Source: Macrostomum lignano
Taxonomy: Eukaryota
Reading direction: 5' to 3'
NCBI GenBank assembly: GCA_002269645.1
Contig: NIVC01000958.1
Location: 186,001 to 250,000, forward strand
DNA length: 64,000 nucleotides
The position numbers and the translations under genes are program-made. Under the pieces are notes generated by a model. That model was not told where the DNA came from. It was given only the letters and a program-made list of their open reading frames with translations, and did not search any database. Positions 15,733 to 36,307 of this stretch are shown here, piece after piece; position 1 is the stretch's first letter, and every line of letters begins with the position of its first letter.

Positions 15733-18700
15733 TCACCCGTTACGAACGAGAGGTTTTTCAGAGTCGGATTGGCAAACCGCCTCAAACCTTCCTCCATTTT
15801 CAACCGGGCTTGCGCCCGGATTTGCCGAAATTGCGGCTATATATTGAAGGCTGTGCCGTCGTCTCATAAAAAGTAGCATCAAAGCAAGCAGAAGTGCCAA
15901 TATAATTCCAACAGGGGTCCCAAGTAGAACCATAATCAGCCTCATTCTTATAGGATTGGCACTTGTTTGTTTTTCCTTAACCAGCCGTGTCCCACTCGTG
16001 AGGCCATTCTATCCTCGGAAAACACGGCCTTGCAGCCCAGTAATGAATGCAGCGGTGTAGCGCTGCATGTATTTCTGGCTTTATTTTACGTTGTATTTAA
16101 TACATTTGCGCACGTATGCACCAGCCGGTTCTATAAGCCACCGTGGGTGATATTGGTAAACAAGTGTACAATTCAAATTGCATTTTAGCTAGCTATTAAA
16201 ATAAGCCTGCCTATACATAAAATTTTACCACTTGCCAATTAGTTAGGCTTAGATTTATTTATTGCTCTTTAGACTTTGGAATCATTTAAAATTTACATAA
16301 CTATATCCTATTTTTTGTTTAGCCTAGGCAAAATGCATATTTAATAAGCTTTCTAGGCTTCTAAAATCTAATAGCAATAGATAAAAACTACCTACCTAGT
16401 AATTTTTTACCTAATAGTAATACAAAGCCTTCTATTTCAAATCATTGATTATTTTCTACTATTGACTAGTAGGTCTAAGTCTAAAATATTTTCTTTTCTT
16501 TTGTGTTATAAAGCCTTTATGCTATATTAGAATATGTTTTTTAATGATAATAAGATTAAGAATCTTTTTTTTTCTTTGGATCTAAAATTCATTTGGTCCT
16601 TCTTTAATTTAAGTAGCTTAGGCCTATCTTTTTATAAGACCTAAGCCTAGCCTATGTTTATAATGTATTATATTAAAATGTTTTAATAATATTGTTTTAT
16701 GGGAATCAAAAGTAGGAATATAACTATATAAGATAAAGCATGCCTAAAATAAAAATCTTTTTGAAATAATTAGCCATAGTCTAATCAACTATAGACTAAG
16801 TAATAACTATTCATTGCCACTATATAAAGTCATGATATCCCTCTAGTTGTGACCTTTTCTTCCCCTCTAATGCTAGGCCTTACCTTTTTCTTTCTAGCCC
16901 ATATTCTCTTCTCTAAAGCCTCACCTTCTTTTCCCTTCAGTATTACCCTCCTCCCCAGTCCCACAATGTTTTCCCATTAAATTCTTACCCTTTTTTCATA
17001 ATCTCACTCTCCTACCCTCTAGCCCCACCTTCCTAGCCTCTAGTCCCACTATCCTTCCCTCCAGCCCCACCCTCCTTCCCTCTAGCCCCGCCCTCCCTTC
17101 CAGCTTCCACCCTTTTCTCTCCTCTGGACCAATCCCTTCTCTCTAGCCCCACCCCTTCCTTCCAGCCCCACCCATTCCCTCCAGCCCTACCTCTTCCCTC
17201 CAGCCCCTCCCCTTCCCTCCAGCCCCACCCCTTTCCTCTAGCCCCAACCCTCCCCTCCAGCTTCCACCCTCTTCTCCCCTCTAGCCCAACCCTCTTACCC
17301 TCTAGCCCCACCCTCTTTCCCTCCAGCCCCACCCTCCTACCCTCTAGCCCCACCCTCCTTCCCTCCAGCCCCACCCTCCTACTCTCTAGCCCCACCCTCC
17401 TTCCCTCCAGCCCCACCCTCTTCTCTTCTGTAGCCCCACCCCACCCCCTTCCCTCCAGCCCCACCCTCCTACCCTCTAGCCCTGCCCTCCCTTCCAGCTT
17501 CCACCCTCTTCTCCTCTCCAGCCCCACCCTCCTACCCTCCAGCCCCACCCTCCTACCCTCTAGCCCCACCCTCCTACCCTCTAGCCCTGCCCTCCCTTCC
17601 AGCTTCCACCCTCTTCTCCCCTCCAGCCCCACCCTCCTACCCTCCAGCCCCACCCTCCTACCCTCCAGCCCCACCCTCCTACCCTCCAGCCCCACCCTCC
17701 TACCCTCTAGCCCCACCCTCCTTCCCTCCAGCCCCAACCTCCTACTCTCTAGCCCCACCCTCCTTCCCTCCAGCCCCACCCTCCTTCCCTCCAGCCCCAC
17801 CCTCTTCTCTTCTGTAGCCCCACCCCACCCCCTTCCCTCCAGCCCCACCCTCCTACCCTCTAGCCCTGCCCTCCCTTCCAGCTTCCACCCTCTTCTCCCC
17901 TCCAGCCCCACCCTCCTACCCTCCAGCCCCACCCTCCTACCCTCTAGCCCCACCCTCCTACCCTCTAGCCCTGCCCTCCCTTCCAGCTTCCACCCTCTTC
18001 TCCCCTCCAGCCCCACCCTCCTACCCTCCAGCCCCACCCTCCTACCCTCCAGCCCCACCCTCCTACCCTCTAGCCCCACCCTCCCCTCCAGCTTCCACCC
18101 TCTTCTCCCTCCAGCCCCACCCTCCTACCCTCCAGCCCCACCCTCCTACCCTCCAGCCCCACCCTCCTACCCTCCAGCCCCACCCTCCTACCCTCTAGCC
18201 CCACCCTCCCTCCAGTTTCCAACCTCTTCTCCTTTCTAGCCCCACCCTCCCCTCCAGTTTCCAACCTCTTCTCCCCTCCAGCCTCACCCTCTTCTCCCCT
18301 CCAGCCCCACCCTCCTACCCTCTAGCCCTACCCTCCCTTCAAAATTCCACCCTCTTCTCCCCTCCAGCACCACCCCCTTCCCTCCAGCCCCACCCTCCTA
18401 CCCTCTAGCCCCACCCCCTTCCCTCCAGCCCCACCCTCCTACCCTCTAACCCCACCCTCCCCTCCAGTTTCCAACCTCTTCTCCCCTCCAGCCTCACCCT
18501 CCTCCCCTCCAGACCCACCCCCTTCCCTCCAGCCCCACCCTCCTACCCTCTAGCCCCACCCTCCCCTCCAGCTTCCAACCTCTTCTCCCCTCCAGCCTCA
18601 CCCTCTTCCCTCCAGACCCACCCTCCTACCCTCCAGACCCACCCTCCTTCCCTCCAGCCCCACCCTCCTTCCCTCCAGCCCCACCCTCCTACCCTCTAGC

Positions 18701-21700
18701 CCCACCCTCCCCTCCAGCTTCCACCCTCTTCGCCCTCTAGCCCCACCCTATTTTCCTATTCAGCCTCACCCTTTCTCGTAGCTCTGCTAATAAAATTTAA
18801 TTATCCTTTTCAGAAGTGAAAAATAATATTTCTCTTTTCTCTCTTCAGAATGTCCTCGCACCGGTCTTGAGGTCATACCACGTGCCGGAGCGACTGGTCG
18901 CAGCAACCATAACTCTCTTCTAGGAGACCCTGGCCGCCGTGGTGACACCTGACGGACTATCCGACCTGTTCAAAACGACCTCAGGGATGCTGCAAGGCGA
19001 CACGCTTGCGTCCAACCGTTTCGTGTTGGTGCTCGATGGGGTGCTACGTAGGGCCCTGCCAACAGATGAGGACAGCTTCCTACTGTGCCGGCAAACAAGC
19101 AGCCGCCAATCGGAGAAGCGGCTGTCACTCATGGGTTACGCCGACGACCTGGCGCTGCCCGCCTCTACGGCTGAGGGAGCTCAGCGCATGCTAGACAGCC
19201 TGGTTGGTGGCAGCTGCGGCATCGGTCGGGCTAGCGGTGAACATCGAGAAGACGGAGGTGATGACTGTACCTGCGGAGCTGCCTATCAAAATCACCTGCT
19301 GGGACACCCGACGGTCATGCAGCAGCTCTACCTCGCTGCGTGTGCTTCACGTACCCCGGCGATCTTGTGCCCAGTGTCCAGGAGGACTTGGCGCGACGCA
19401 GGGGCCTGGCCTGGGCGGCCTTCCGCTCCATCCGAGTCCGTCCTGCAGAACGCCGCGCTGCCAGACTGCTGCGATCACCTAGCGAGACCCTCCGCAGGCG
19501 AAGACATCAGCTGGCGGGCCACACCATCCACGCGGAGGCCTACTGTTCTCAACCAGTGCAAGACGTCCTGCTGCTCACGATGCAGGGCCCCTGGCGCCGG
19601 GGCTACGGCCGGGCGAGTCGCGTCGCGGATTGCCTGTTGGATGGCGCTGGGGTGATTGGCCAGGCGCACGCTGTTGCCGCCTTTAGAGAGCTCGCACTGA
19701 GAGAACTGATCTGACATTGCCTCCCATTGTGAACTGTTACTTTTAACTCAACAATACTGGGTGTGCCTTGTTGTTATTTTCTCTTCAAAAAAATTTGCCT
19801 AGCTGCGAACTGTGATGGTGCATATCGCGTACTCGTGATTCAATAGCTTATACTTATTACTGTTTTACTTATTGCCTTCCGATGTCAATGCTATTTATTG
19901 CGTGTAATATTATCGCAAAATTTAAGTTCGGGTGTCATTATTTAGCTACTGCCGCTGTTCTGCATTACAATTATTATAGTACTTCCTATCTACTGACGTA
20001 ACATTGTACCAAAAATTTTACATTGCGTGGCGCCAAAACCAATCTTGTTGAATGCTACTAGCGTAATAGCCGTTTGAATCGCTTGAAATACATTGTAATG
20101 CCATGCTGTATTGCTTTTGACGATCTAAACGACACTGGCTAGACTTCACTGATCCATATGCTCCTCAAGCAAGGTATATGGAATGCAGATTGAGCAGCAA
20201 ACTTAGTGTTTGATTGATAGAGATATTGTATAGTTGGATTTTGGATCACGGATAGAACCAAGGAATCTAGATCTGGAGGCATGGAGGCATGCGGGGGGAG
20301 CCGCCGAAAGCAGCGGAGCTGTTGGGGGGAGCGGCGGAAAGCAGCGGAGCTGTTGGGGGAGCGGCGGAAAGCAGCGGAGCTATTGGTGGAAGTGGCGGAA
20401 AGCAGCGGAGCTGTTGGGGGGAGCGGCGGAAAGCAGCGGAGCTGTTGGGGGGAGCGGCGGAAAGCAGCGGAGCTGTTGGGGGAGCGGCGGAAAGCAGCGG
20501 AGCTATTGGTGGAAGTGGCGGAAAGCAGCGGAGCTGTTGGGGGGAGCGGCGGAAAGCAGCGGAGCCGTTGGGGGGAGCGACGGAAAGCAGCGGAGCTGTT
20601 GGGGGAGCGGCGGAAAGCAGCGGAGCTGTTGGGGAGCGGCGGAAAGCAGCGGAGCTATTGGTGGAAGTGGCGGAAAGCAGCGGAGCTGTTGGGGGGAGCG
20701 GCGGAAAGCAGCGGAGCTATTGGTGGAAGTGGCGGAAAGCAGCGGAGCTGTTGGGGGAGCGGCGGAAAGCAGCGGAGCTATTGGTGGAAGTGGCGGAAAG
20801 CAGCGGAGCTGTTGGGGGGAGCGGCGGAAAGCAGCGGAGCTGTTGGGGGAGCGGCGGAAAGCAGCGGAGCTGTTGGGGGAGCGGCGGAAAGCAGCGGAGC
20901 TGTTGGGGGAGCGGCGGAAAGCAGCGGAGCTGTTGGGGGGAGCGGCGGAAAGCAGCGGAGCTGTTGGGGGGAGCGGCGAAAAGCAGCGAAACTATTGGTG
21001 GAAGTGGCGGAAAGCAGCGGAGCTGTTGGGGGGAGCGGCGGAAAGCAGCGGAGCTGTTGGGGGGAGCGGCGGAAAGCAGCGGAGCTGTTGGGGGGAGCGG
21101 CGGAAAGCAGCGGAGCTGTTGGGGGGAGCGGCGGAAAGCAGCGGAGCTGTTGGGGGAGCGGCGGAAAGCAGCGGAGCTGTTGGGGGAGCGGCGGAAAGCA
21201 GCGGAGCTATTGGTGGAAGTGGCGGAAAGCAGCGGAGCTGTTGGGGGAGCGGCGGAAAGCAGCGGAGCTATTGGTGGAAGTGGCGGAAAGCAGCGGAGCT
21301 GTTGGGGGGAGCGGCGGAAAGCAGCGGAGCTGTTGGGGGAGCGGCGGAAAGCAGCGGAGCTGTTGGGGGAGCGGCGGAAAGCAGCGGAGCTGTTGGGGGG
21401 AGCGGCGGAAAGCAGCGGAGCTATTGGTGGAAGTGGCGGAAAGCAGCGGAGCTGTTGGGGGAGCGGCGGAAAGCAGCGGAGCTATTGGTGGAAGTGGCGG
21501 AAAGCAGCGGAGCTGTTGGGGGAGCGGCGGAAAGCAGCGGAGCTGTTGGGGGAGCGGCGGAAAGCAGCGGAGCTGTTGGGGGAGCGGCGGAAAGCAGCGG
21601 AGCTGTTGGGGGAGCGGCGGAAAGCAGCGGAGCTGTTGGGGGAGCGGCGGAAAGCAGCGGAGCTGTTGGGGGAGCGGCGGAAAGCAGCGGAGCTGTTGGG

Positions 21701-24700
21701 GGAGCGGCGGAAAGCAGCGGAGCTGTTGGGGGAGCGGCGGAAAGCAGCGGAGCTGTTGGGGGAGCGGCGGAAAGCAGCGGAGCTGTTGGGGAGCGGCGGA
21801 AAGCAGCGGAGCTGTTGGGGAGCGGCGGAAAGCAGCGGAGCTGTTGGGGGAGCGGCGGAAAGCAGCGGAGCTATTGGTGGAAGTGGCGGAAAGCAGCGGA
21901 GCTGTTGGGGGGAGCGGCGGAAAGCAGCGGAGCTATTGGTGGAAGTGGCGGAAAGCAGCGGAGCTGTTGGGGGGAGCGGCGGAAAGCAGCGGAGCTGTTG
22001 GGGGGAGCGGCGGAAAGCAGCGGAGCTGTTGGGGGAGCGGCGGAAAGCAGCGGAGCTGTTGGGGGAGCGGCGGAAAGCAGCGGAGCTATTGGTGGAAGCG
22101 GCGGAAAGCAGTGGAGCTGTTGGTTTGATAACAGCTGACAGGCTTATTTGCATAGAGCGATGCTATGAGAATGAATTCAGTTAGTCAGTTTAAGGCAGAA
22201 TGCTGGCTCTCTGCCTCTGCCTACCCTTCAACTGAATCGAGTGAACTCGCAGTGCCTGAAGTGCCCGAAGTTGGTTCTACATGTACGTATGCATATTGTT
22301 TTGGCAAACTGGATTACAAACAGGTACGGCTCATATATTACAGTGTACTACATGTATTTGAGTGGCGAATTGGTGACGGTTTAAATGTTACTAGGGCTAC
22401 GTGTATGTGACCCGGCCGGTGCTCTACTACCTTGAATTCATGCCCGTAAGGCTCAGCCTCCGATCATTTACTAATTATTTAATGTCGCGAGAGGGGACTC
22501 TCAGTCCCCAACATCCTGCATGGTATTTAGGGGCCTAGGGTCTTGTCCTTGGGGCCTTCGACAAGTGACTGCCGCAATTTGACTGGGGACTATGAACTCT
22601 AAACATTGGCACCTCAAGATTAGAGCGGCGGCACTCGAACCAAAATAATGTTGAAGGACTACAGAATACATGCTGTATATATAGCTACGTACATGTAACG
22701 CATCTTACACTCAATGTATCAATGTTACATGTACAGTATCCAATACCATGCTAAAAGAGCACGTAACTTCTGAATGTACAGTGTACATATAGCAGGCGTG
22801 AGGGCATTAAAGATATTCTTCCATCTATACCGAGGGTCATCTCAAAAGTTTCATTAAACACTTATTAATTTTCAACAAACGAGTTTCAGAACAGTGAACA
22901 GCTCAAAAACCTTTAAAATAACTTCCGTTGGTTTGAATCATGCGCTACCAGCAGCCAGGCAACTTGTGGACGCCGTCAGCAGCGCCAGATTCGCACAGGT
23001 CTTTTGCAATGCGGCCGATCTCGCTGCCTGGATGCTGGTTCCCTTGAATACCCTTGAAGCTGGTTTTTAAGCTTTGGGAAAGGCTAAAATCGCAGGGACT
23101 GAGGTCTGGGGAGTAAGTAGGATGAGGCAGCACCTCCCACTGATAGTCCCGCAGTAGGTCCTGCACAATGCGGGCTGTGTGCGAACTGGCATTGTCGTGC
23201 GGAAGGAGTGGACCAAGTTCCAGGGTCTGGCCGCTTTTTGCGCAAGGCAGGCCGAAGATGGTGGGTGGGGAAGCTCCGATAAAACTTTGGTTGATGTTTT
23301 GGCCCTCAGAAATGCGGTGGATGAGAATAATGCCAAAACTGTCGTAGCATGCGATGATCATCAGTTTGTCGGCTCCCTTGGCGCGCCGCAAAACTGATGG
23401 TCTCAGTGGCTGGGCAGAATTTTTCGACTGCCACTCGGAATTCTGGCTCTTGAGGTTGGGCTAAATGAGCTAGCTTCTCTCTGTTCTATATGATCTCGTA
23501 TACATGTAGCTGCATGGCAGCTTTCAAACATTTCGTAAAAGGTGCCCCAGTTCCAACTTACGTCATATTCAACTTAAGAATATGATACCTGACCCGACCA
23601 GTCTTATACAAGTTTCTCGTAAAAGTTGCCAATGCCCTATACCCTAGAAGACATTGACTTGTTGATTCTTAGTAGATCTTGTCTATCTTCCTGGGTTGCT
23701 GCGCAAGTACTTGCAAGAACGTGCAAGATCTTCGCTATAATAATACTTAGGTAAACCTAGATCTGGGCGACTTGCTACATCGTACAAGAGCTTAGCTTTT
23801 ATATCCTTTTAGAGCTTCGAATCGCATATTTTCTTAAATTTATTGTTCCTTTTTGTCATAAAATAAATATAGTTCAGCTAGAACACTTTAGCGAAATGAA
23901 TTACAAAGCAAATGTACCTCCCATCTTAGAAGATCCTGCAAGAACCGAGCAGATTGAGAAGATCTGCTAAGAATGGCACAGAGACAAGATCTGCTAAGTT
24001 TGAGAAACAGAATGTCCTCTAGGGTATCCCCTCAACTTCCCCTACTATTTTCTGTCTCCTCTCTGCTCTCGCATATTTCTACTCTACTCCTAACAGGATC
24101 ATATTTAGATGTATACATGTATAGCTAAAGCAGCAACTCGGTCCTCAGAAGCATCCCCTCATCATTCCCCTCTGAGGGATATCAACAAGCTGGATTCGGA
24201 TTTCAACATTAGGAATCAGGGATATAAGGGAATTAACAATCGGGGATTGAGATTTAGAAATGAAAATGAAAATGAAAATTGGGGATTGAGATTAAAAAAA
24301 TATCTAAATGAACTAGCTTCTCTCTATTTTATGATATACATGTATTCTGTAGTCCTTCAACATTATTTTGGTTCGAGTGCCGCCGCTCTAATCTTGAGGT
24401 GCCAATGTTTAGAGTTCATAGTCCCCAGTCAAATTGCGGCAGTCACTTGTCGAAGGCCCCAAGGACAAGACCCTAGGCCCCCTAAATACCATGCAGGATG
24501 TTGGGGACTGAGAGTCCCCTCTCGCGACATTAAATAATTAGTAAATGATCGGAGGCTGAGCCTTACGGGCATGAATTCAAGGTAGTAGAGCACCGGCCGG
24601 GTCACATACACGTAGCCCTAGTAACATTTAAACCGTCACCAATTCGCCACTCAAATACATGTAGTACACTGTAATATATGAGCCGTACCTGTTTGTAATC

Positions 24701-27700
24701 CAGTTTGCCAAAACAATATGCATACGTACATGTAGAACCAACTTCGGGCACTTCAGGCACTGCGAGTTCACTCGATTCAGTTGAAGGGTAGGCAGAGGCA
24801 GAGAGCCAGCATTCTGCCTTAAACTGACTAACTGAATTCATTCTCATAGCATCGCTCTATGCAAATAAGCCTGTCAGCTGTTATCAAACCAACAGCTCCA
24901 CTGCTTTCCGCCGCTTCCACCAATAGCTCCGCTGCTTTCCGCCGCTCCCCCAACAGCTCCGCTGCTTTCCGCCGCTCCCCCAACAGCTCCGCTGCTTTCC
25001 GCCGCTCCCCCCAACAGCTCCGCTGCTTTCCGCCGCTCCCCCAACAGCTCCGCTGCTTTCCGCCACTTCCACCAATAGCTCCGCTGCTTTCCGCCGCTCC
25101 CCCCAACAGCTCCGCTGCTTTCCGCCACTTCCACCAATAGCTCCGCTGCTTTCCGCCGCTCCCCCAACAGCTCCGCTGCTTTCCGCCGCTCCCCCAACAG
25201 CTCCGCTGCTTTCCGCCGCTCCCCCCAACAGCTCCGCTGCTTTCCGCCGCTCCCCCAACAGCTCCGCTGCTTTCCGCCGCTCCCCCAACAGCTCCGCTGC
25301 TTTCCGCCGCTCCCCCAACAGCTCCGCTGCTTTCCGCCGCTCCCCCAACAGCTCCGCTGCTTTCCGCCGCTCCCCCAACAGCTCCGCTGCTTTCCGCCGC
25401 TCCCCCAACAGCTCCGCTGCTTTCGGCGGCTCCCCCCGCATGCCTCCATGCCTCCAGATCTAGATTCCTTGGTTCTATCCGTGATCCAAAATCCAACTAT
25501 ACAATATCTCTATCAATCAAACACTAAGTTTGCTGCTCAATCTGCATTCCATATACCTTGCTTGAGGAGCATATGGATCAGTGAAGTCTAGCCAGTGTCG
25601 TTTAGATCGTCAAAAGCAATACAGCATGGCATTACAATGTATTTCAAGCGATTCAAACGGCTATTACGCTAGTAGCATTCAACAAGATTGGTTTTGGCGC
25701 CACGCAATGTAAAATTTTTGGTACAATGTTACGTCAGTAGATAGGAAGTACTATAATAATTGTAATGCAGAACAGCGGCAGTAGCTAAATAATGACACCC
25801 GAACTTAAATTTTGCGATAATATTACACGCAATAAATAGCATTGACATCGGAAGGCAATAAGTAAAACAGTAATAAGTATAAGCTATTGAATCACGAGTA
25901 CGCGATATGCACCATCACAGTTCGCAGCTAGGCAAATTTTTTTGAAGAGAAAATAACAACAAGGCACACCCAGTATTGTTGAGTTAAAAGTAACAGTTCA
26001 CAATGGGAGGCAATGTCAGATCAGTTCTCTCAGTGCGAGCTCTCTAAAGGCGGCAACAGCGTGCGCCTGGCCAATCACCCCAGCGCCATCCAACAGGCAA
26101 TCCGCGACGCGACTCGCCCGGCCGTAGCCCCGGCGCCAGGGGCCCTGCATCGTGAGCAGCAGGACGTCTTGCACTGGTTGAGAACAGTAGGCCTCCGCGT
26201 GGATGGTGTGGCCCGCCAGCTGATGTCTTCGCCTGCGGAGGGTCTCGCTAGGTGATCGCAGCAGTCTGGCAGCGCGGCGTTCTGCAAGACGGACTCGGAT
26301 GGAGCGGAAGGCCGCCCAGGCCAGGCCCCTGCGTCGCGCCAAGTCCTCCTGGACACTGGGCACAAGATCGCCGGGGTACGTGAAGCACGCGCAGCGAGGT
26401 AGAGCTGCTGCATGACCGTCGGGTGTCCCAGCAGGTGATTTTGATAGGCAGCTCCGCAGGTACAGTCATCACCTCCGTCTTCTCGATGTTCACCGCTAGC
26501 CCGACCGATGCCGCAGCTGCCACCAACCAGGCTGTCTAGCATGCGCTGAGCTCCCTCAGCCGTAGAGGCGGGCAGCGCCAGGTCGTCGGCGTAACCCATG
26601 AGTGACAGCCGCTTCTCCGATTGGCGGCTGCTTGTTTGCCGGCACAGTAGGAAGCTGTCCTCATCTGTTGGCAGGGCCCTACGTAGCACCCCATCGAGCA
26701 CCAACACGAAACGGTTGGACGCAAGCGTGTCGCCTTGCAGCATCCCTGAGGTCGTTTTGAACAGGTCGGATAGTCCGTCAGGTGTCACCACGGCGGCCAG
26801 GGTCTCCTAGAAGAGAGTTATGGTTGCTGCGACCAGTCGCTCCGGCACGTGGTATGACCTCAAGACCGGTGCGAGGACATTCTGAAGAGAGAAAAGAGAA
26901 ATATTATTTTTCACTTCTGAAAAGGATAATTAAATTTTATTAGCAGAGCTACGAGAAAGGGTGAGGCTGAATAGGAAAATAGGGTGGGGCTAGAGGGGCG
27001 AAGAGGGTGGAAGCTGGAGGGGAGGGTGGGGCTAGAGGGTAGGAGGGTGGGGCTGGAGGGAAGGAGGGTGGGCTGGAGGGAAGGAGGGTGGGTCTGGAGG
27101 GTAGGAGGGTGGGTCTGGAGGGAAGAGGGTGAGGCTGGAGGGGAGAAGAGGTTGGAAGCTGGAGGGGAGGGTGGGGCTAGAGGGTAGGAGGGTGGGGCTG
27201 GAGGGAAGGGGGTGGGTCTGGAGGGGAGGAGGGTGAGGCTGGAGGGGAGAAGAGGTTGGAAACTGGAGGGGAGGGTGGGGTTAGAGGGTAGGAGGGTGGG
27301 GCTGGAGGGAAGGGGGTGGGGCTAGAGGGTAGGAGGGTGGGGCTGGAGGGAAGGGGGTGGTGCTGGAGGGGAGAAGAGGGTGGAATTTTGAAGGGAGGGT
27401 AGGGCTAGAGGGTAGGAGGGTGGGGCTGGAGGGGAGAAGAGGGTGAGGCTGGAGGGGAGAAGAGGTTGGAAACTGGAGGGGAGGGTGGGGCTAGAAAGGA
27501 GAAGAGGTTGGAAACTGGAGGGAGGGTGGGGCTAGAGGGTAGGAGGGTGGGGCTGGAGGGTAGGAGGGTGGGGCTGGAGGGTAGGAGGGTGGGGCTGGAG
27601 GGTAGGAGGGTGGGGCTGGAGGGGAGAAGAGGGTGGAAGCTGGAGGGGAGGGTGGGGCTAGAGGGTAGGAGGGTGGGGCTGGAAGGTAGGAGGGTGGGGC

Positions 27701-30700
27701 TGGAGGGGAGAAGAGGGTGGAAGCTGGAGGGGAGGGTGGGGCTAGAGGGTAGGAGGGTGGGCTGGAGGGTAGGAGGGTGGGGCTGGAGGGTAGGAGGGTG
27801 GGGCTGGAGGGAGAAGAGGGTGGAAGCTGGAAGGGAGGGCAGGGCTAGAGGGTAGGAGGGTGGGGCTAGAGGGTAGGAGGGTGGGGCTGGAGGGTAGGAG
27901 GGTGGGGCTGGAGGGGAGAAGAGGGTGGAAGCTGGAAGGGAGGGCAGGGCTAGAGGGTAGGAGGGTGGGGCTGGAGGGAAGGGGTGGGGTGGGGCTACAG
28001 AAGAGAAGAGGGTGGGGCTGGAGGGAAGGAGGGTGGGGCTGGAGGGAAGGAGGGTGGGGCTAGAGAGTAGGAGGTTGGGGCTGGAGGGAAGGAGGGTGGG
28101 GCTAGAGGGTAGGAGGGTGGGGCTGGAGGGTAGGAGGGTGGGGCTGGAGGGTAGAAGGGTGGGGCTGGAGGGTAGGAGGGTGGGGCTGGAGGGGAGAAGA
28201 GGGTGGAAGCTGGAAGGGAGGGCAGGGCTAGAGGGTAGGAGGGTGGGGCTAGAGGGTAGGAGGGTGGGGCTGGAGGGTAGGAGGGTGGGGCTGGAGGGGA
28301 GAAGAGGGTGGAAGCTGGAAGGGAGGGCAGGGCTAGAGGGTAGGAGGGTGGGGCTGGAGGGAAGGGGGTGGGGTGGGGCTACAGAAGAGAAGAGGGTGGG
28401 GCTGGAGGGAAGGAGGGTGGGGCTGGAGGGAAGGAGGGTGGGGCTAGAGAGTAGGAGGTTGGGGCTGGAGGGAAGGAGGGTGGGGCTAGAGGGTAGGAGG
28501 GTGGGGCTGGAGGGTAGGAGGGTGGGGCTGGAGGGTAGGAGGGTGGGGCTGGAGGGTAGGAGGGTGGGGCTGGAGGGGAGAAGAGGGTGGAAGCTGGAAG
28601 GGAGGGCAGGGCTAGAGTGTAGGAGGGTGGGGCTAGAGGGAAGGAGGGTGGGGCTAGAGGGTAGGAGGGTGGGGCTGGAGGGAAGGAGGGTGGGGCTAGA
28701 GGGTAGGAGGGTTGGGCTAGAGGGGAGAAGAGGGTGGAAGCTGGAGGGGAGGGTTGGGGCTAGAGGAAAGGGGTGGGGCTGGAGGGAAGGGGAGGGGCTG
28801 GAGGGAAGAGGTAGGGCTGGAGGGAATGGGTGGGGCTGGAAGGAAGGGGTGGGGCTAGAGAGAAGGGATTGGTCCAGAGGAGAGAAAAGGGTGGAAGCTG
28901 GAAGGGAGGGCGGGGCTAGAGGGAAGGAGGGTGGGGCTGGAGGGAAGGATAGTGGGACTAGAGGCTAGGAAGGTGGGGCTAGAGGGTAGGAGGGTGAGAT
29001 TATGAAAAAAGGGTAAGAATTTAATGGGAAAACATTGTGGGACTGGGGAGGAGGGTAATACTGAAGGGAAAAGAAGGTGAGGCTTTAGAGAAGAGAATAT
29101 GGGCTAGAAAGAAAAAGGTAAGGCCTAGCATTAGAGGGGAAGAAAAGGTCACAACTAGAGGGATATCATGACTTTATATAGTGGCAATGAATAGTTATTA
29201 CTTAGTCTATAGTTGATTAGACTATGGCTAATTATTTCAAAAAGATTTTTATTTTAGGCATGCTTTATCTTATATAGTTATATTCCTACTTTTGATTCCC
29301 ATAAAACAATATTATTAAAACATTTTAATATAATACATTATAAACATAGGCTAGGCTTAGGTCTTATAAAAAGATAGGCCTAAGCTACTTAAATTAAAGA
29401 AGGACCAAATGAATTTTAGATCCAAAGAAAAAAAAAGATTCTTAATCTTATTATCATTAAAAAACATATTCTAATATAGCATAAAGGCTTTATAACACAA
29501 AAGAAAAGAAAATATTTTAGACTTAGACCTACTAGTCAATAGTAGAAAATAATCAATGATTTGAAATAGAAGGCTTTGTATTACTATTAGGTAAAAAATT
29601 ACTAGGTAGGTAGTTTTTATCTATTGCTATTAGATTTTAGAAGCCTAGAAAGCTTATTAAATATGCATTTTGCCTAGGCTAAACAAAAAATAGGATATAG
29701 TTATGTAAATTTTAAATGATTCCAAAGTCTAAAGAGCAATAAATAAATCTAAGCCTAACTAATTGGCAAGTGGTAAAATTTTATGTATAGGCAGGCTTAT
29801 TTTAATAGCTAGCTAAAATGCAATTTGAATTGTACACTTGTTTACCAATATCACCCACGGTGGCTTATAGAACCGGCTGGTGCATACGTGCGCAAATGTA
29901 TTAAATACAACGTAAAATAAAGCCAGAAATACATGCAGCGCTACACCGCTGCATTCATTACTGGGCTGCAAGGCCGTGTTTTCCGAGGATAGAATGGCCT
30001 CACGAGTGGGACACGGCTGCCTTAACCGACAGGGCAGCCGCAAGCATCCAGCTGAGCACAGGTTGGCTCGATTTTCCGCATCTGTTTCCGGCCGCATCCG
30101 GGAAGCTGATCAGAGCCGGAAGCTGCTCACTGCAGTCCGTAAAGCTCACCAGTCCGAGCACCTCGCCATCAATGGTAAGATTGATAGCTCTGAGTGAACC
30201 GCAGGAGACTGACAAGTTCGTACTCTGGACAGTATGGTGTCTGGAATTCAAGTGTAAAGAGTTGTGAAATTTGATTTAATTAGCGAGCCAATTGTTCTCA
30301 TAGCAGATGAACTGCTATTCTCAACTTAAGAAACTCACAGCTTATCAGCATCCTCGAACTCAGCCATTTTGCAGCCAGCTTCTGCACCGCAGTTCAGGTA
30401 GAAGACCTTCTTGGTCATGTGCTCATAGAACAGTCCGATGCGAAGCCTCTGTGCGAGATTCAGCGGCTCCTTGATGCGGGTGCTCAGGCCGGAGCCGACG
30501 CGAGTTCGCTGGCCTGAAGCCGGTGTTCAAGTGGAGTGAAATTGTGCGAGAGTTAAGCTGTGCTGTCTACAATCCAAAGTAAACAGCGATGTTCAATAGT
30601 GGACACTGTGCGTGATAAACTGATAATGATAATGGCAATGAACGCCATGTAGATTCTACTTCAAGTTAGTATTGCAGGCGTGGAATATGCATCTCTAGTA

Positions 30701-33700
30701 GTGCGTTACCGCACCTATTTACTGAGATTTACTGAACACAGCAGTGCTCGGCACTGTACGAGCGTAGTAATTTACTACAATTTAATAGTTTGAGCGCGGG
30801 CGAACAGCCGCCCCAAATGAATCACCGCCGGCTTATAAGCACACAGAGCAACCACCCCCAACCAACACCGACCCCAAGGCCAAGCTGGGCTGGCTGACTA
30901 AAGCCGGTTTACACTGCCGCAACAAACCCGTGCATAATAAGTAAACCATTTTTGACTCCACGAATTGTTTTAAAAGCCACCGGTTCACTCCAGCTTACTC
31001 TCTGTGACGAAGTTCTGCAGAGCCGCGGAGCTGTTGAAGCTGGCGAGCCTCATGACTCCGCTGTCAGCGCTCATCGCAGCCAGCTCAGCAGTCAGGGACC
31101 GACGAACCGGTCCAGTGGTGTAGCAGTTGCTCTCAAAATTAGTCATGCTTCTGCCGCAGAACCCCGGCTCCATCAGGCGAATTTGCAGAGCCGGGATATA
31201 CGCTGAGCTTCTCCGATTCAGCCAGAATGAGACCGTCAGGTAGCTCCTACAGTTTGATGTAGAGTGCAGTGATTAGTTTCGAGTAAGAAATTGATTTAAA
31301 AAAACTTTTTTCAGCATCGGCCCAGCTCTCTCGTACCCTTTCGTCAGTTGCAGCACGCGCAGCATCTCCAGCTCCACGGGCTTTGGCTCGCTTGTTGAAG
31401 GCGACGAGCAAGTTGCTGGAGATGCATTGGGGTTTGTAATGGCACATAAGAAATGAAAGCATTTGACCGGTTTTATTGAGTTCAAGCTAGCAGTCAGCAG
31501 TATGGGTCAACAACCACACAGACTGCTCGTTCACAGATATGGTTAGAATTGGAAGTTGAAAACCAATAATTTAACTACATGTTTAACTGTGCTCAAAGCG
31601 CTCTGCTTACAGTCCGAAGCATTCGAGTGCAGTTCGTATCGCATCAGTTGATGCTGTGTAGGCGAGTCCACAGATCGTGTCCACCTCTGCTGTTTAACGT
31701 GAGCCTCCGTGTCAAAGCCAGTCAGAACCACTACGACTTTGTCAAGATGGTCAGTCAGAATCTTCCATTTGCAGTTGAGGCCTTCCTCAGGCACAGGGTC
31801 TGCGTCAGTTTTAGGAATGATTCGATCTTCAGTGAACTCAAGGCTGAGCTGGATCTCATTGGTGTTGCCACGGGGAAAGCAGTACTGGTTGCCTGCCAGA
31901 GCGCTGTGGATAAGAACGGGCGGGACAGTAGATTTGGTGTGGTAAATTTAGTGTTGAAAGTTAATGCAGACGCATCCTATTTATGATCTTAGGTAAGATA
32001 TACGCAAAATATTAAATACTTAGTTTTGTGGCATTGTGGTGAGTAGCTAAGAGATTTTAGAAATGAAAGAAATGACATCGAAACTTTGGTAAAATTGTTG
32101 TTTTGCTTTTACCCTTAGCAATCAGTATGATGACCCAATCAGTATGATGACCCAATCAGTAGGATGACCCAATCAGTATGATGACCCAATCAGTATGATG
32201 ACCCAATCAGTATGATGACCCAATCAGTATGATGACCCAATCAGTATGATGACCCAATCAGTATGATGACCCAATCAGTATGATGACCCAATCAGTATGA
32301 TGACCCAATCAGTATGATGACCCAATCAGTATGATGACCCAATCAGTATGATGACCCAATCAGTATGATGACCCAATCAGTATGATGACCCAATCAGTAT
32401 GATGACCCAATCAGTATGATGACCCAATCAGTATGATGACCCAAATCAGTATGATGACCCAATCAGTATGATGACCCAATCAGTATGATGACCCAATCAG
32501 TATGATGACCCAATCAGTATGATGACCCAATCAGTATGATGACCCAATCAGTATGATGACCCAATCAGTATGATGACCCAATCAGTATGATGACCCAATC
32601 AGTATGATGACCCAATCAGTATGATGACCCAATCAGTATGATGACCCAATCAGTATGATGACCCAATCAGTATGATGACCCAAATCAGTATGATGACCCA
32701 ATCAGTATGATGACCCAATCAGTATGATGACCTAAATCAGTATGATGACCCAATCAGTATGATGACCCAATCAGTATGATGACCTAAATCAGTATGATGA
32801 TCCAATCAGTATGATGACCCAATCAGTATGATGACCCAATCAGTATGATGACCCAATCAGTATGATGACCCAAATCAGTATGATGACCCAATCAGTATGA
32901 TGACCCAATCAGTATGATGACTCAATCAGTATGATGACCCAATCAGTATGATGACCCAATCAGTATGATGACCCAATCAGTATGATGACCCAATCAGTAT
33001 GATGACCCAAATCAGTATGATGACCCAATCAGTATGATGACCCAACCAGTATGATGACCCAATCAGTATGATGACCCAATCAGTATGATGACCCAATCAG
33101 TATGATGACCCAATCAGTATGATGACCCAATCAGTATGATGACCCAAATCAGTATGATGACCTAAATCAGTATGATGATCCAATCAGTATGATGACCCAA
33201 TCAGTATGATGACCCAATCAGTATGATGACCCAATCAGTATGATGACCCAATCAGTATGATGACCCAATCAGTATGATGACCCAATCAGTATGATGACCC
33301 AATCAGTATGATGACCCAATCAGTATGATGACCCAATCAGTATGATGACCCAATCAGTATGATGACCCAATCAGTATGATGACCCAATCAGTATGATGAC
33401 CCAATCAGTATGATGACCCAATCAGTATGATGACCCAATCAGTATGATGACCCAATCAGTATGATGACCCAATCAGTATGATGACCCAATCAGTATGATG
33501 ACCCAATCAGTATGATGACCCAATCAGTATGATGACCCAATCAGTATGATGACCCAATCATTATGATGATCCAATCAGTATGATGACCCAATCAGTATGA
33601 TGACCCAATCAGTATGATTCACCCCAAGCAAAAACCGGATTCCGCAACAGAAATTCCAGCTGGTGCAAGAAATTAAGCGTCGCATCACTCACATTTGAAA

Positions 33701-33748
33701 TGTGGCAGACAGCAGCAGAAGAGTCGCCAGGCTTCTGCCAATCGCCAT
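15733..33748 (-). CDS. CUB-like + CTLD + TM receptor family, copy B/C, interrupted by the foldback element
   Basis: Exons 33748-33693 (MAIGRSLATLLLLSATFQ signal peptide), 31903-31611, 31415-31337, 31246-30999, 30513-30339, and 30240-30020 + 15974-15733. Intron phases 2,1,2,1,2 are consistent and there are no stops. CUB-like motifs: NCKWKILTD..VVVVLTGFDTE and GSYLTVSF. CTLD-like motifs: C...FESNCY, LASFNS, LRIGLF and C..DC. TM segment: MRLIMVLLGTPVGIILALLLALMLLFM-RRR. Confidence 0.85.
17008..18750. repeat. 21-bp-based polypyrimidine minisatellite (CCCTCCAGCCCCACCCTCCTA), left arm
   Basis: Tandem units with variant blocks. Produces the artefactual LEGRRVG ORFs. Confidence 0.95.
18846..19720 (+). 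pseudogene. Decayed non-LTR retrotransposon RT fragment (RTE/RTE-X-like), left arm
   Basis: GMLQGDTLA..FVLVLD..LR, GYADDLAL, VGLAVNIEKTEVM and F.Y.G..V.S..EDLARRRGLAWAAF are spread over three frames. In-frame TAG at 18921-18923. Confidence 0.85.
20290..22125. repeat. ~30-bp G-rich satellite (GCGGCGGAAAGCAGCGGAGCTGTTGGGGGA), left arm, ~60 copies
   Basis: Tandem units with a variable G-run and a TATTGGTGGAAGTGG variant. All three frames are open, which is a repeat artefact. Confidence 0.95.
22829..23455 (-). pseudogene. Mariner (DD34D) transposase 3' fragment with probable TIR
   Basis: KLMIIACYD..GI, HDNASSH and YSPDLSPCDF are present, with 34 residues between the last two catalytic Asp. A TA-CCGAGGGTCATCTCAAAAGTTTC TIR-like end lies at ~22828-22852. 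The fragment is frameshifted and 5'-truncated. Confidence 0.85.
24895..25435. repeat. Same 30-bp satellite, right arm, ~18 copies
   Basis: Reverse complement of 20290-22125 but about 1.3 kb shorter. Confidence 0.95.
26010..26885 (-). pseudogene. Mirror copy of the RTE-like RT fragment, right arm
   Basis: ORFs mirror 18939-19717 (coordinate sum 45730), with the same stop codon at 26807-26809. Confidence 0.85.
26980..28995. repeat. 21-bp-based polypurine minisatellite, right arm
   Basis: Mirror of 17008-18750 but about 270 bp longer. Confidence 0.95.
32119..33617. repeat. 17-bp minisatellite (AATCAGTATGATGACCC), ~88 copies, in intron 1 of copy B/C
   Basis: Near-perfect tandem units with occasional CAAATC/CTAAATC variants. 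Confidence 0.97.
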
Positions 33749-34675
33749 CTGCAGATTCAGTCGCATGTCGCTCGCTTCCGGCACCTAAAAATCGCGATGT
33801 GAGGTGGACGCTGCATGCAGGAGATTGTGTGTCCGCTCAGCATTTATAGGTAAAGACGTGAAACTGCCGAACAAGCTGGATATTCGTAAATGCCATCAAA
33901 CTTCTAGTACACGTACGAGCCTACTTCTAATTTAAGTATTTTAGTGTTTTAGTACCCGGATGTAGTGACACAATTAACTTGGCTGTTTGTTAACCCAACC
34001 CTGAGACCAAGGAATTTCACATGCAATAAGCGTCTAGATTTGACTTTTTATTTGATTTTAAATATAAAATTGCATCTGCTGAGACAGACTCAGCCTTTGG
34101 TCTGACTTTCATGAGCATAATTATATTCTAGTGACTCTAATGAACCCCTGTAGCTATGATACTACATGCATTACAAAGAAATCTAATCAATCAATCAATC
34201 AATCAATCAAATCAATCAGTTGAATACGAAAATCATTTAGCAATCGAAGTACAATACACAATACACAGCCCTAATCAAACGACAGTAGAAAGTTCCGTGG
34301 GAACAAAAAATATTTTGTTTAACATTCTTAACTACTATTTTTTCTTCATTCTATCTTTCCTTAAACAAATATTATTTGACAAAAGAGGACACTTTAACAT
34401 TGCCATCAAATAATGCTCAAATTTCTTAAAAATTATGGTAACTAAGTGTGCACGAAACTCAACTCACTGTCCATGTGGACTCATACTCACCAAGAGATGT
34501 TGGCCAACTCCAGCTTCTTGCAGACTTTATAAGAGAAAATTTAGGAAGGGAGCACCACGGAAAACCCATGATTTTACAGGCCAACTCTGTGGCAGATCCA
34601 AGAAAAATCCAAGTAAACCCACGGCTTTTCCGCGGCTCCAATAACACCTAACGGCCGTGGGCTAGCCAGACAATC
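33620..34675. repeat. Paralogous exon 1/upstream region, homologous to 4130-5162
   Basis: Collinear identity blocks, e.g. TGGTAACTAA.TGTGCACGAAACTCAACTCACTGTCCATGTGGACTC and ACGGCCGTGGGCTAGCCAGACAATC. Confidence 0.9.
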
Positions 34676-34960: not shown

Positions 34961-36307
34961 CAAAATATTATCTTAATGTAAATATTGTGCGTGTAAAAAA
35001 AGCAGAACATGCAGAAAAGCAGAAATTAGAATTTGAGTGAACAAACGTTAAATTATGGTAATGAGGATTATTATTAAGATTAGAGGATTGTTAAGTTCAA
35101 GCGATGAAAATACACGTATTAGAAAAGTAGTATCGAAAGAGTGAAAATTATTATTTATTCGAACTGCCAATCGAAAATAAATTAGTGATAAAAAAATAGT
35201 TATCATAAATATATAAATTTTATAATTTTTAAATAAAATATATAAATTTTTTTATTTATTTATAATTTATTTATTTATTTATTTATTTATTTATAATTTA
35301 TTTAATTTATTTATAAATATTTATTTATAGCTATAAATATTTATAGTGATAAATAAAAAACAGTGGAAATGATTTTTTTTAATTTTAGTATTAGCACCCA
35401 TACTTCTTCGTCTGTAATCATATTACTTTAAATCAGTAGCTCATTTTGGGATTGTAGAATTTAAGTGATTAAGCTCGCGATAATGTATTGGAGAGCCACT
35501 CATAAGCCAAATTGATATTAGGTTAGCCAATAGCCTAAACTAAGATGCACAGGGAGGGCCCCTTGCGTGCACGCGCTCGCAGCTCACACTGCTGCTAATA
35601 TCAGCAGCAGTCTGAAGGGTAAGCTCAACTGCCTGCAAGTTAGCGATGTGACAGTCCATTAGTGTGGCAGTTGCAGGCCTAAAGTAACTCTCATGAAGTC
35701 ACGGACTCATGGTCTCTATTTTATTGGCTTGTTTTTCTTTTGGCACGGTTTGAGTCTAGCAGTACTAATATTAAACACATAGTAATCTTTTGTAACACTT
35801 GGGGTGAAGCACATTTAGTTCCTGTCATATTTATTGTCATTGAAGTCGAAGATCAATTATATATACCGGTACCGTATCGACTTCCGGTACCGGTACTGTA
35901 TCTTATTTTTTAAAAATTAGATTCTATGTTTGAAAGTTTAACTGTTGTGCTACCTTAGATACATCTCATATTTTATCAAAGTTGCTTCTCTGCCCACTTA
36001 TTCTGCTTTCAGTTACTCGGCATGTACAGTAGGAGAGTCAAGTGTTTTTTGAAAATTATATTGACTTCTGTAGAAACGGACTGAACGATCCTTCACTGAT
36101 TATAAAATATGAAAGATTTTATACTTGGAAACGCATTGCGCTGCATTTAGTTGTGTGGCGGTGGTGACTGCATGCGCTGCATGCACTACTCAATAGTAAA
36201 TCTTAAAGTGTCTTGTTCGCTTTGAATTTTTGTTTACTCTAGTACTGTAAGTAGAACGGTATTGTACATTAGTGCTAGAAAGTAAAAAATCAAGAAGAAA
36301 ATTCAAA

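What the first reader, a model, noticed from the sequence alone, without database searches (positions are those of the whole stretch)
15975..30026. Giant 14-kb foldback element with a clean 7-bp TSD and CA...TG ends
Seen: arms of 6691 and 5681 bp are reverse complements around a 1666-bp spacer. They end in perfect CAGCCGTGTCCCACTCGTGAGGCC termini with CCTTAAC on both outer sides. Deleting the element plus one TSD restores an open host exon that differs from its paralogue by only 3 nt. Known: 7-8-bp TSDs with CA..TG ends typify the P superfamily, and Drosophila Galileo is a P-family foldback with 7-bp TSDs and long TIRs containing tandem repeats. Inference: this is a very large non-autonomous P/Galileo-like element whose multi-kb TIRs are built from captured DNA. 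The TSD and the unequal arms argue against an assembly fold-back artefact.
Basis: partly seen in the sequence, partly recalled or inferred. Interest (0 to 1): 0.85.

Follow-up and report, generated by a model that had tools for sequence, protein, structure and literature searches.

The report
Giant foldback transposon splitting a flatworm gene
A 14-kb piece of mobile DNA made almost entirely of two mirror-image arms has inserted into the coding exon of a Macrostomum (flatworm) membrane-protein gene; the insertion is real and unusually large, but it is a known kind of element and its transposon family could not be determined here.

Summary
A 14,038-bp element (15982-30019) has arms of 6,691 and 5,681 bp around a 1,666-bp spacer. 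Its 24-nt termini are perfect inverted copies (CAGCCGTGTCCCACTCGTGAGGCC), and CCTTAAC flanks both ends. Removing the element and one CCTTAAC restores an open minus-strand exon. That exon is collinear with four in-window paralogues and aligns without gaps to an empty site in Macrostomum lignano scaffold NIVC01002507.1. So this is a genuine insertion with a 7-bp target-site duplication. The arms match at 5,397 of 5,406 aligned bases. They differ mainly by whole-unit indels in two tandem arrays (21-bp and 30/31-bp units). They also carry a decayed non-LTR reverse-transcriptase fragment, and the spacer holds a mariner-like transposase remnant. No usable transposase is present. Best reading: a non-autonomous, foldback-type cut-and-paste DNA transposon, mobilised in trans, with arms built by inverted duplication of junk DNA. 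Assignment to the P/Galileo family rests on the 7-bp duplication alone. No second copy or partner transposase could be found with these tools, so superfamily membership is untested. A Kolobok-style TTAA reading fits worse. A second near-perfect 8.2-kb inverted repeat without TE hallmarks lies at 37.7-62.5 kb. Moderate interest: a new member of a known kind.

The parts
15975..15981 (.). Left copy of the target-site duplication, CCTTAAC
   Evidence: One copy is needed to match the length of the empty site in L001 without gaps.
15982..16005 (+). Left 24-nt terminus CAGCCGTGTCCCACTCGTGAGGCC, a perfect inverted copy of 29996-30019
   Evidence: only two matches in the window, 0.00 expected by chance.
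15982..22672 (+). Left arm, 6,691 bp (segments A-E)
15982..17004 (+). Segment A: unique, non-coding terminal domain, 1,023 bp, 100% identical to 28997-30019
   Evidence: the longest ORF is 73 aa and starts in the host flank; the others are 44 aa or shorter.
17005..18749 (+). Array B, left: 21-bp unit CACCCTCCTACCCTCCAGCCC, about 83 copies
18750..20293 (+). Segment C, left: unique 1,544 bp, 2 mismatches to the right-arm copy, carries the RT fragment
18939..19482 (+). Frameshifted C-terminal fragment of a non-LTR reverse transcriptase (YADD motif)
   Evidence: RVT_1 at 38.3 bits, E 1.5e-9, after joining two frames; 45-66% identity to M. lignano RT plus endonuclease proteins.
20294..22123 (+). 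Array D, left: 30/31-bp unit GGGGGAGCGGCGGAAAGCAGCGGAGCTGTT, about 60 copies
22124..22672 (+). Segment E, left: unique 549 bp, innermost part of the arm
   Evidence: 1 indel relative to 24339-24888
22673..24338 (.). Central unpaired spacer, 1,666 bp
22945..23391 (-). Remnant of a Tc1/mariner-type transposase C-terminus (HDNA...SPDLSPCDF)
   Evidence: weak DDE_3 hit, 18-22 bits, below Pfam's cut-off. The motif reading is mine.
24339..30019 (-). Right arm, 5,681 bp: E 24339-24888, D 24889-25436 (about 18 copies), C 25437-26980, B 26981-28996 (about 96 copies), A 28997-30019
30020..30026 (.). Right copy of the target-site duplication, CCTTAAC
15733..15981 (-). 3' half of the interrupted host exon: transmembrane segment, cytoplasmic tail and TGA stop
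30027..30275 (-). 5' half of the interrupted host exon (extracellular part)

Best explanation
This is a genuine insertion of a non-autonomous class II (cut-and-paste, terminal-inverted-repeat) transposon with foldback architecture. It sits in the last coding exon of one member of a Macrostomum-specific transmembrane-protein gene family. A transposase encoded elsewhere in the genome recognised the CAG...CTG termini, excised the element, and joined it to a target cut with a 7-nt stagger. Repair of that stagger produced the CCTTAAC duplication. The arms make up 88% of the element. They were not built as transposase-binding repeats. They arose by inverted duplication (TIR extension) of one side of an ancestral element that already contained two tandem arrays and a dead LINE fragment. 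Since then the arms have differed only by array slippage and a few transitions. The superfamily is unresolved. A 7-bp duplication fits the 1360/Galileo branch of the P superfamily best. Shown here: the insertion, the duplication, the termini, the arm anatomy, the absence of a transposase, and disruption of the reading frame. Inferred: trans-mobilisation, the order of events that built the arms, and the superfamily.
For: The junctions and termini are exact. Four in-window paralogues are collinear across the site. M. lignano NIVC01002507.1 carries an empty site that aligns without gaps once the element and one CCTTAAC are removed. The restored open frame is homologous to an annotated M. lignano protein. 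The arms are 99.8% identical at aligned bases, and their large indels are multiples of the array units (189 and 83 bp in the 21-bp array; 1224, 29 and 28 bp in the 30/31-bp array). Eight of the nine mismatches are transitions. Both arms carry the same frameshifted RT fragment, so the arms were duplicated or homogenised after that fragment had decayed. No transposase domain was found. This architecture matches published foldback-like elements: long TIRs with internal tandem repeats, unequal TIRs from differing repeat numbers, TIR extension by recruiting internal sequence, and the longest TIRs in non-autonomous copies (PMC3573991, PMC4168063, PMC3169594, PMC4079207). Within the P superfamily, 1360 and Galileo make 7-bp duplications (PMC3698922).
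Against: Only one copy is seen. The terminus is absent from the other 50 kb of the window, from 28.8 kb of M. lignano scaffold, and from JGI metagenomes. No predicted protein in the large database derives from another copy. Mobility as a family is therefore inferred from a single event. The duplicated 7-mer differs at 3 of 7 positions from every paralogue (CCGCAGC), an unexplained cluster. The 7-bp length cannot be separated from an 8-bp reading. The source assembly cannot be checked against reads, and published M. lignano assemblies are redundant and partly chimeric (PMC5730564; bioRxiv 10.1101/2023.04.19.537444). A second large near-perfect inverted repeat in the same window has no TE hallmarks. 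That shows large palindromes can arise here, or be assembled here, without transposition.
Confidence: 0.72

Rival explanations
1. One reading: the element belongs to the P superfamily (Galileo/1360-like) and is mobilised by a THAP-domain P-type transposase.
For: The duplication is 7 bp and the ends are CA...TG. 1360 and Galileo make 7-bp duplications and the P element 8 bp (PMC3698922). Galileo has long TIRs with internal tandem repeats, unequal arms and TIR extension (PMC3573991).
Against: There is one insertion only. The duplicated sequence, CCTTAAC or GTTAAGG on the other strand, does not match Galileo's palindromic GTANTAC/GTATTAC target (PMC4168063). No P-type transposase or THAP site was examined. 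CA..TG ends are not specific to this superfamily (my own knowledge). The TIRs are about five times longer than the 1.2 kb given as the P-superfamily maximum (PMC3573991). The papers I read report most foldback elements as Mutator-type (PMC4079207).
Confidence: 0.35
2. It is a foldback element of another C/DxxH-group superfamily. One option is hAT, with an 8-bp duplication CCTTAACC and (C)AG...CTG ends. The other is Mutator/Phantom-type, like Drosophila FB, Tetris, Tm1 and FARE.
For: The direct repeat extends to 8 bp if the left end starts at AGCC. CAG...CTG ends resemble hAT termini (from memory). Most described foldback elements are assigned to Mutator (PMC4079207, PMC3169594). M. lignano encodes MULE-domain proteins (P0018).
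Against: The 8-bp reading makes the otherwise perfect termini asymmetric. A 9-bp reading fails (TTCCTTAAC versus CCTTAACCG). Mutator-type foldbacks give 8-10 bp duplications (PMC3169594, PMC4079207). The 8-mer does not fit the hAT nTnnnnAn target pattern (from memory).
Confidence: 0.2
3. It is a TTAA-targeting element (Kolobok or piggyBac type). The true duplication is TTAA, and the extra shared bases (CC before it, C after it) are coincidence.
For: TTAA lies at the centre of the repeat. Read this way, one end is TTAA-GGCAGCC, which fits Kolobok's 5'-RR rule (PMC9587614). The paralogues have GCAG where this copy has TTAA.
Against: The other end would read TTAA-CCAGCC, which breaks the RR..YY rule and makes the ends unequal in length and sequence (PMC9587614). 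It also requires three extra flanking bases to match by chance, about 1 in 64. piggyBac-type CCC...GGG ends are absent.
Confidence: 0.05
4. The outer junctions are real, but the multi-kb palindromic interior is wholly or partly an assembly product. Alternatively it was built in place after a smaller element inserted, by the same inverted-duplication or gene-conversion process that made the 8.2-kb inverted repeat at 37.7-62.5 kb.
For: A second inverted repeat in the window has 8,233/8,234-bp arms with 1 mismatch and 1 indel and an 8.3-kb spacer. It carries host genes and has no duplication or TE ends. The M. lignano assembly is described as redundant, with 36% of its length in chimeric scaffolds (bioRxiv 10.1101/2023.04.19.537444). 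Tandem arrays make up 44% of the element, and arrays are hard to assemble.
Against: Missed-adapter fold-back reads give palindromes with no spacer or only a short one, usually at contig ends (general knowledge). This one has a 1.67-kb unique spacer and continuous host sequence on both sides. The arms differ by transitions and by whole-unit indels, which looks like evolved sequence rather than consensus error. The inverted repeat runs exactly to the last base next to each duplication copy, as expected for transposon ends.
Confidence: 0.12

Closest known systems
Galileo (P superfamily, Drosophila), especially its non-autonomous '2 TIR' and 'extended TIR' copies
   Same: It makes a 7-bp duplication. 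The TIRs are long and make up most of non-autonomous copies. Tandem repeats inside the TIRs differ in number between the two arms. TIRs grow by recruiting internal sequence. Other TEs are found nested inside copies (PMC3573991, PMC4168063, PMC3698922).
   Different: Galileo TIRs are 0.3-1.2 kb; these are 5.7-6.7 kb. Galileo targets GTANTAC; here the duplication is CCTTAAC. Galileo is known from Drosophilidae and has an identified THAP/P-type transposase; here the host is a flatworm and no transposase or partner is known. Homology was not tested.
Mutator-type foldback elements: Drosophila FB, Tetris (D. virilis), Tm1 (Meloidogyne), FARE (Arabidopsis)
   Same: The architecture is foldback, with internally repetitive TIRs. 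Arms are unequal because repeat numbers differ. Most copies have no coding capacity. Paralogous filled and empty sites were used as evidence of mobility (PMC3169594, PMC4079207).
   Different: These elements give 8-10 bp (mostly 9 bp) duplications; here it is 7 bp. Their TIRs are largely tandem short repeats that start near the ends. Here a 1-kb unique terminal domain precedes the arrays, and the arms contain 3.1 kb of unique sequence including a LINE fragment.
Kolobok superfamily
   Same: TTAA lies within the duplicated sequence, and one end can be read as TTAA-GGCAGCC (5'-RR).
   Different: Kolobok duplicates only TTAA and has RR...YY termini at both ends (PMC9587614). Here 7 bp are duplicated, and under the TTAA reading the other end begins with CC.
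Large inverted segmental duplications (palindromes), such as the one at 37719-62475 in this window
   Same: Arms are multi-kb and near-identical around a unique spacer of several kb.
   Different: The neighbouring palindrome carries host genes, has no defined inverted termini and no flanking duplication, and is not an insertion relative to paralogues.

Membership tests
Class II TIR (cut-and-paste) DNA transposon, generic | Terminal inverted repeats that run to the exact ends of the insertion | tested here: met
   The 24-nt termini are perfect, and the inverted repeat continues for 5.7-6.7 kb.
Class II TIR (cut-and-paste) DNA transposon, generic | Short direct target-site duplication, plus an empty site that holds a single copy | tested here: met
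   CCTTAAC is on both sides. The L001 empty site aligns without gaps, and four paralogues are collinear across the site.
Class II TIR (cut-and-paste) DNA transposon, generic | Multiple dispersed copies sharing the termini | not testable with these tools
   No other copy was found in the rest of the window, in L001 or in JGI metagenomes. No Macrostomum genome could be searched.
Class II TIR (cut-and-paste) DNA transposon, generic | Encoded transposase, or an autonomous partner with the same ends | tested here: not met
   No transposase domain was found inside, only a mariner-like remnant below threshold. The element is therefore non-autonomous. A partner could not be searched for.
Foldback-like elements (a structural class, polyphyletic) | TIRs make up most of the element, with little or no coding capacity | tested here: met
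   The arms account for 12,372 of 14,038 bp, or 88%. No intact ORF has a domain hit.
Foldback-like elements (a structural class, polyphyletic) | Tandem repeats inside the TIRs, with copy number differing between arms | tested here: met
   The 21-bp array has 83 versus 96 copies and the 30/31-bp array 60 versus 18.
P superfamily (P, 1360, Galileo) | Target-site duplication of 7-8 bp (9 bp in some) | tested here: met
   It is 7 bp, with 8 bp possible, from a single insertion. Lengths per family are from PMC3698922.
P superfamily (P, 1360, Galileo) | THAP-domain, RNase H-like P-type transposase encoded by the element or by a partner with matching termini | not testable with these tools
   None is present in the element. 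The genome was not available for a partner search.
P superfamily (P, 1360, Galileo) | Palindromic target-site motif (Galileo GTANTAC, within a 15-bp palindrome) | tested here: inconclusive
   CCTTAAC/GTTAAGG matches GTANTAC at only 2 positions and is not palindromic (PMC4168063). One site cannot define a motif, and another lineage need not share Galileo's.
Kolobok | TTAA-specific 4-bp duplication | tested here: not met
   The duplicated stretch is 7 bp (CC-TTAA-C). A TTAA-only reading leaves three further matching bases unexplained.
Kolobok | Termini 5'-RR ... YY-3' | tested here: not met
   Under the TTAA reading the ends are 5'-CC...CC-3', so only one end conforms (rule from PMC9587614).
Mutator/Phantom-type foldbacks (FB, Tetris, Tm1) | 8-10 bp, mostly 9 bp, target-site duplication | tested here: not met
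   The 9 bp on each side differ (TTCCTTAAC versus CCTTAACCG). An 8-bp match needs asymmetric ends. Lengths are from PMC3169594 and PMC4079207.
hAT | 8-bp duplication with symmetric YARNG-type termini | tested here: inconclusive
   With symmetric CAG...CTG ends the duplication is 7 bp. An 8-bp duplication requires the left end to lack its C. The terminal and target consensus are recalled from memory, not tested.
Tc1/mariner (because of the remnant in the spacer) | TA duplication at the element ends | tested here: not met
   The bases next to the ends are C and C, not TA. The mariner-like piece is an internal fragment.
Dada (6-7 bp duplication; family recalled from memory) | Insertion into multicopy small-RNA genes | tested here: not met
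   The target is a protein-coding exon. Rfam finds no RNA gene anywhere in the window.

The most novel reading that the evidence does not exclude
The element is one copy of a recently or currently active Galileo-like (P-superfamily) foldback family in flatworms. It would then have by far the longest TIRs known for that superfamily, and its transposase could move cargo of at least 14 kb. The near-identity of the arms would be maintained by intramolecular conversion. Read-through transcription from the host gene would produce a hairpin RNA of more than 5 kb that feeds small-RNA pathways.
Probability: 0.2. Interest if true: 0.55.

Novelty: new member of a known kind. Interest (0 to 1): 0.36.

Why it matters
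Macrostomum lignano is a regeneration and stem-cell model in which transgenesis is still being developed (PMC5730564, PMC8717057). An endogenous cut-and-paste system that has recently moved a 14-kb element would be a candidate large-cargo vector, if its transposase can be found. It would also be a source of insertional mutations in laboratory lines. For transposon biology, this is a clean example with a single-copy empty site. It shows foldback architecture growing by inverted duplication of already decayed TE debris and satellite arrays, in a phylum where my literature searches turned up no such element. For genome assembly, two multi-kb near-perfect palindromes within 64 kb mark this region for validation with long reads.

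Tried and rejected
1. Other copies at the protein level. A search with the ORF that reads through the terminus found nothing. Exact-product look-ups of window ORFs were not on record. A chimeric query of all arm and spacer ORFs returned only LINE reverse transcriptases at 45-66% identity.
2. Other copies at the DNA level. The 24-nt and 14-nt termini, with mismatches allowed, matched only the two ends in the window and nothing in L001. The JGI metagenome scan returned 0. No eukaryotic genome collection was available.
3. Composite transposon made of two complete elements in inverted orientation. Rejected, because the inner ends of the arms lack the terminal sequence.
4. The central spacer as a nested complete Tc1/mariner. 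Rejected: it has no TIRs and no TA flanks, and holds only a C-terminal remnant of about 150 aa.
5. Twin-priming or retrotransposition origin, prompted by the RT fragment. Rejected: the RT piece is about 0.55 kb of each arm (0.8 kb counting the ORF2 tail), frameshifted and mirrored in both arms, and I saw no poly(A) or simple-repeat tail in 19680-20360.
6. CCTTAAC as part of the element, like Tm1's terminal motifs. Rejected: removing both copies would leave the exon 7 bp shorter than L001 and out of frame.
7. Subterminal repeat motifs in the terminal 1 kb. Nothing convincing was found.
8. RNA genes as target or cargo. Rfam found none.
9. The palindrome CAGCCGGCTG at the paralogous sites equals the two 5-nt element ends abutted. 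I considered it as an excision footprint or a target mimic. I set it aside as probably Ala-codon (GCN) low complexity, because this copy's own homologue of that motif (TAACCGACAG) lies wholly outside the element. It remains unexplained.

Full report
OBSERVATION. At the left junction the window reads ...GTTTGTTTTT CCTTAAC | CAGCCGTGTCCCACTCGTGAGGCC..., and at the right junction ...GGCCTCACGAGTGGGACACGGCTG | CCTTAAC CGACAGGG.... The 24-nt terminus occurs only at these two places, on opposite strands. With up to 3 mismatches allowed, shuffled sequence gave 0.00 expected matches. The element is 14,038 bp (15982-30019). The left arm is 15982-22672 (6,691 bp), the right arm 24339-30019 (5,681 bp) and the spacer 22673-24338 (1,666 bp).

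ARM ANATOMY. Each arm has five parts, listed from the outer end inward.
- A: unique, 1,023 bp, 100% identical between arms.
- B: tandem array of a 21-bp unit, 83 copies on the left and 96 on the right.
- C: unique, 1,544 bp, 2 mismatches between arms.
- D: tandem array of a 30/31-bp unit, 60 copies on the left and 18 on the right.
- E: unique, 549/550 bp, 1 indel between arms.
A global arm-to-arm alignment gives 5,397 matches, 9 mismatches (8 of them transitions) and 12 gap events. The large gaps are 189 and 83 bp in the 21-bp array and 1,224, 29 and 28 bp in the 30/31-bp array, all close to whole numbers of units. The arms make up 88% of the element and the arrays 44%.

IT IS AN INSERTION. 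Removing the element and one CCTTAAC produces a sequence that aligns straight across the junction with four paralogous copies in the window, at about 38.2, 42.8, 57.4 and 62.0 kb. Identity is 86-88%, and the paralogues carry 3 extra bases at the site. The reconstructed site encodes an open minus-strand frame, 30275..30027 joined to 15981..15733. Its best database relative is a hypothetical protein of Macrostomum lignano, BOX15_Mlig030037g1. They share 66% identity over residues 118-268 of 272, including a transmembrane segment followed by RRR.

EXTERNAL EMPTY SITE. The scaffold carrying that gene was fetched as L001 (GCA_002269645.1, NIVC01002507.1). A third family member there matches the window's right flank at 92.7% (L001 26469-27010 against window 30569-30026). 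It matches the left flank at 95.5% (L001 27015-28776 against window 15976-14207). It has no trace of the element. L001 aligns to the reconstructed empty site without a single gap. So exactly one copy of the 7-mer belongs to the host, and the repeat is a target-site duplication rather than part of the element. The window therefore comes from M. lignano or a very close relative. The 4.5-7% flank divergence exceeds the roughly 2% reported between M. lignano subgenomes (bioRxiv 10.1101/2023.04.19.537444). L001 is thus a paralogue, or an orthologue in a sibling genome, and not an allele.

LENGTH OF THE DUPLICATION. With symmetric ends (CAGCC...GGCTG) it is 7 bp. It can be read as 8 bp (CCTTAACC) only if the left end lacks its first C. 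It can be read as TTAA only if the ends are C-CAGCC... and ...GGCTG-CC, which are unequal. Kolobok elements duplicate TTAA and have 5'-RR...YY-3' termini (PMC9587614). Under that reading only one end complies. I take 7 bp as most likely, 8 bp as possible and TTAA as unlikely.

ONE ODDITY AT THE TARGET. Every paralogue and L001 read CCGCAGC where this copy reads CCTTAAC, which is 3 changes in 4 adjacent bases. The paralogues' CAGCCGGCTG equals the two 5-nt element ends abutted. This copy's own homologue of that motif (TAACCGACAG) lies entirely outside the element. The motif encodes an Ala-rich stretch, and differences between the copies are clustered throughout this region. I therefore treat the resemblance as coincidence, but it is not explained.

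CONTENT. There is no transposase. ORFs and six-frame translations of the spacer, of segment E and of the forward frames of segment C gave only two Pfam signals. One is a sub-threshold DDE_3 match (18-22 bits) on the minus strand of the spacer, 22945-23391. Its HDNA...SPDLSPCDF sequence looks like the C-terminus of a mariner-type transposase (the motif reading is mine). The other is in segment C: an RVT_1 match of 38.3 bits once two reading frames are joined. That fragment is 45-66% identical to M. lignano proteins carrying RT and AP-endonuclease domains, that is, non-LTR retrotransposons. The same frameshifted fragment is present in both arms. So the arms were duplicated, or last homogenised, after the fragment had decayed. 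Segment A has no ORF above 44 aa apart from a 73-aa ORF that starts in the host flank and no convincing subterminal repeats. Rfam finds nothing in the window.

MECHANISM. The best-supported account is a non-autonomous foldback-type cut-and-paste transposon. A transposase supplied in trans bound the termini and integrated the element at a 7-nt staggered cut. The long arms arose by inverted duplication of one side of an ancestral element that already held arrays and TE debris. Array slippage has since made the arms unequal. All of this has precedent. In Galileo, TIRs contain tandem repeats whose number differs between the two arms. They also lengthen by recruiting internal sequence, and the longest TIRs occur in non-autonomous copies (PMC3573991, PMC4168063). 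Foldback architecture is considered to have evolved independently in several superfamilies (PMC3169594, PMC4079207). What is shown here is the insertion, its ends, its duplication, its anatomy, its lack of a transposase and the disruption of the host frame. Mobilisation in trans, the order of events that built the arms, and the superfamily are inferred.

SUPERFAMILY. Duplication length is the only discriminating character available. P makes 8 bp, and 1360 and Galileo make 7 bp (PMC3698922). Mutator-type foldbacks such as Tm1 and Tetris make 8-10 bp (PMC3169594, PMC4079207). Kolobok makes TTAA (PMC9587614). This favours the 1360/Galileo type, but from a single insertion. The duplicated sequence does not resemble Galileo's GTANTAC target (PMC4168063). 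These TIRs are about five times the 1.2-kb maximum quoted for the P superfamily (PMC3573991). No P-type transposase or partner could be sought, because none of the searchable DNA collections holds the Macrostomum genome. Attempts through predicted proteins and a metagenome scan found no second copy. Membership in the P superfamily is therefore a lead, not a finding. I put it at about 0.35.

ARTEFACT AND CONTEXT. A missed-adapter fold-back read would give a palindrome with little or no spacer, typically at a contig end. Here there is a 1.67-kb unique spacer, host sequence on both sides, an exact duplication, and arms that differ by transitions and whole-unit indels. That argues for real sequence. 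However, the window contains a second near-perfect inverted repeat: 37719-45951 against 62475-54242. Its arms are 8,233/8,234 bp with 1 mismatch and 1 indel, and its spacer is 8,290 bp. It carries host-gene paralogues, has no flanking duplication, and its left outer end abuts a 16-bp tandem array. Published M. lignano assemblies are redundant and partly chimeric, and 15% of the genome is simple and tandem repeats (PMC5730564; bioRxiv 10.1101/2023.04.19.537444). So large palindromes arise, or are assembled, in this region without transposition. Read-level validation is needed before array lengths are trusted. I cannot tell whether the arms were built before or after the insertion.

VERDICT. It is a new member of a known structural kind, notable for its size and its clean empty site. 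Interest is moderate.

Noticed in passing
window 37719-45951 and 54242-62475: A second giant inverted repeat. The arms are 8,233/8,234 bp with 1 mismatch and 1 indel, around an 8,290-bp spacer. It carries two host-gene paralogues per arm, has no flanking duplication, and its left outer end abuts a 16-bp tandem array.
   Followed up: partly
window 15975-15981 / 30020-30026, compared with 38181-38200, 42775-42794, 57400-57419, 61994-62013 and L001 ~27005-27020: The duplicated 7-mer CCTTAAC differs at 3 clustered positions from CCGCAGC in all paralogues. The paralogues' CAGCCGGCTG palindrome equals the two 5-nt element termini abutted. This is probably Ala-codon low complexity, but it is unexplained.
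   Followed up: partly
window 8639-11328 (+): Gypsy-type LTR-retrotransposon pol ORFs with RVT_1, RNase H and integrase core domains. No LTR pair of 100 bp or more was found within 4.5-15.9 kb.
   Followed up: partly
window 32119-33618, 36306-37720, 47410-47859, 48400-48975, 49740-51136: Five further long tandem arrays with units of 17, 16, 39, 15 and 21 bp. The last one underlies a 410-aa ORF (49682-50914, minus strand) that draws many spurious coiled-coil and collagen-type Pfam hits.
   Followed up: no
window 1667-4984, 30032-34581, 62003-63985; L001 1-28776: The interrupted gene belongs to a clustered Macrostomum gene family with no Pfam domain (a transmembrane protein). It has at least six copies in the window and three in the M. 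lignano scaffold. The copies are arranged differently in the two loci.
   Followed up: partly
window 23461-23489 and 24304-24332: A 29-nt direct repeat (90% identical) lies 843 bp apart inside the spacer. It may mark a further nested insertion. Not examined.
   Followed up: no
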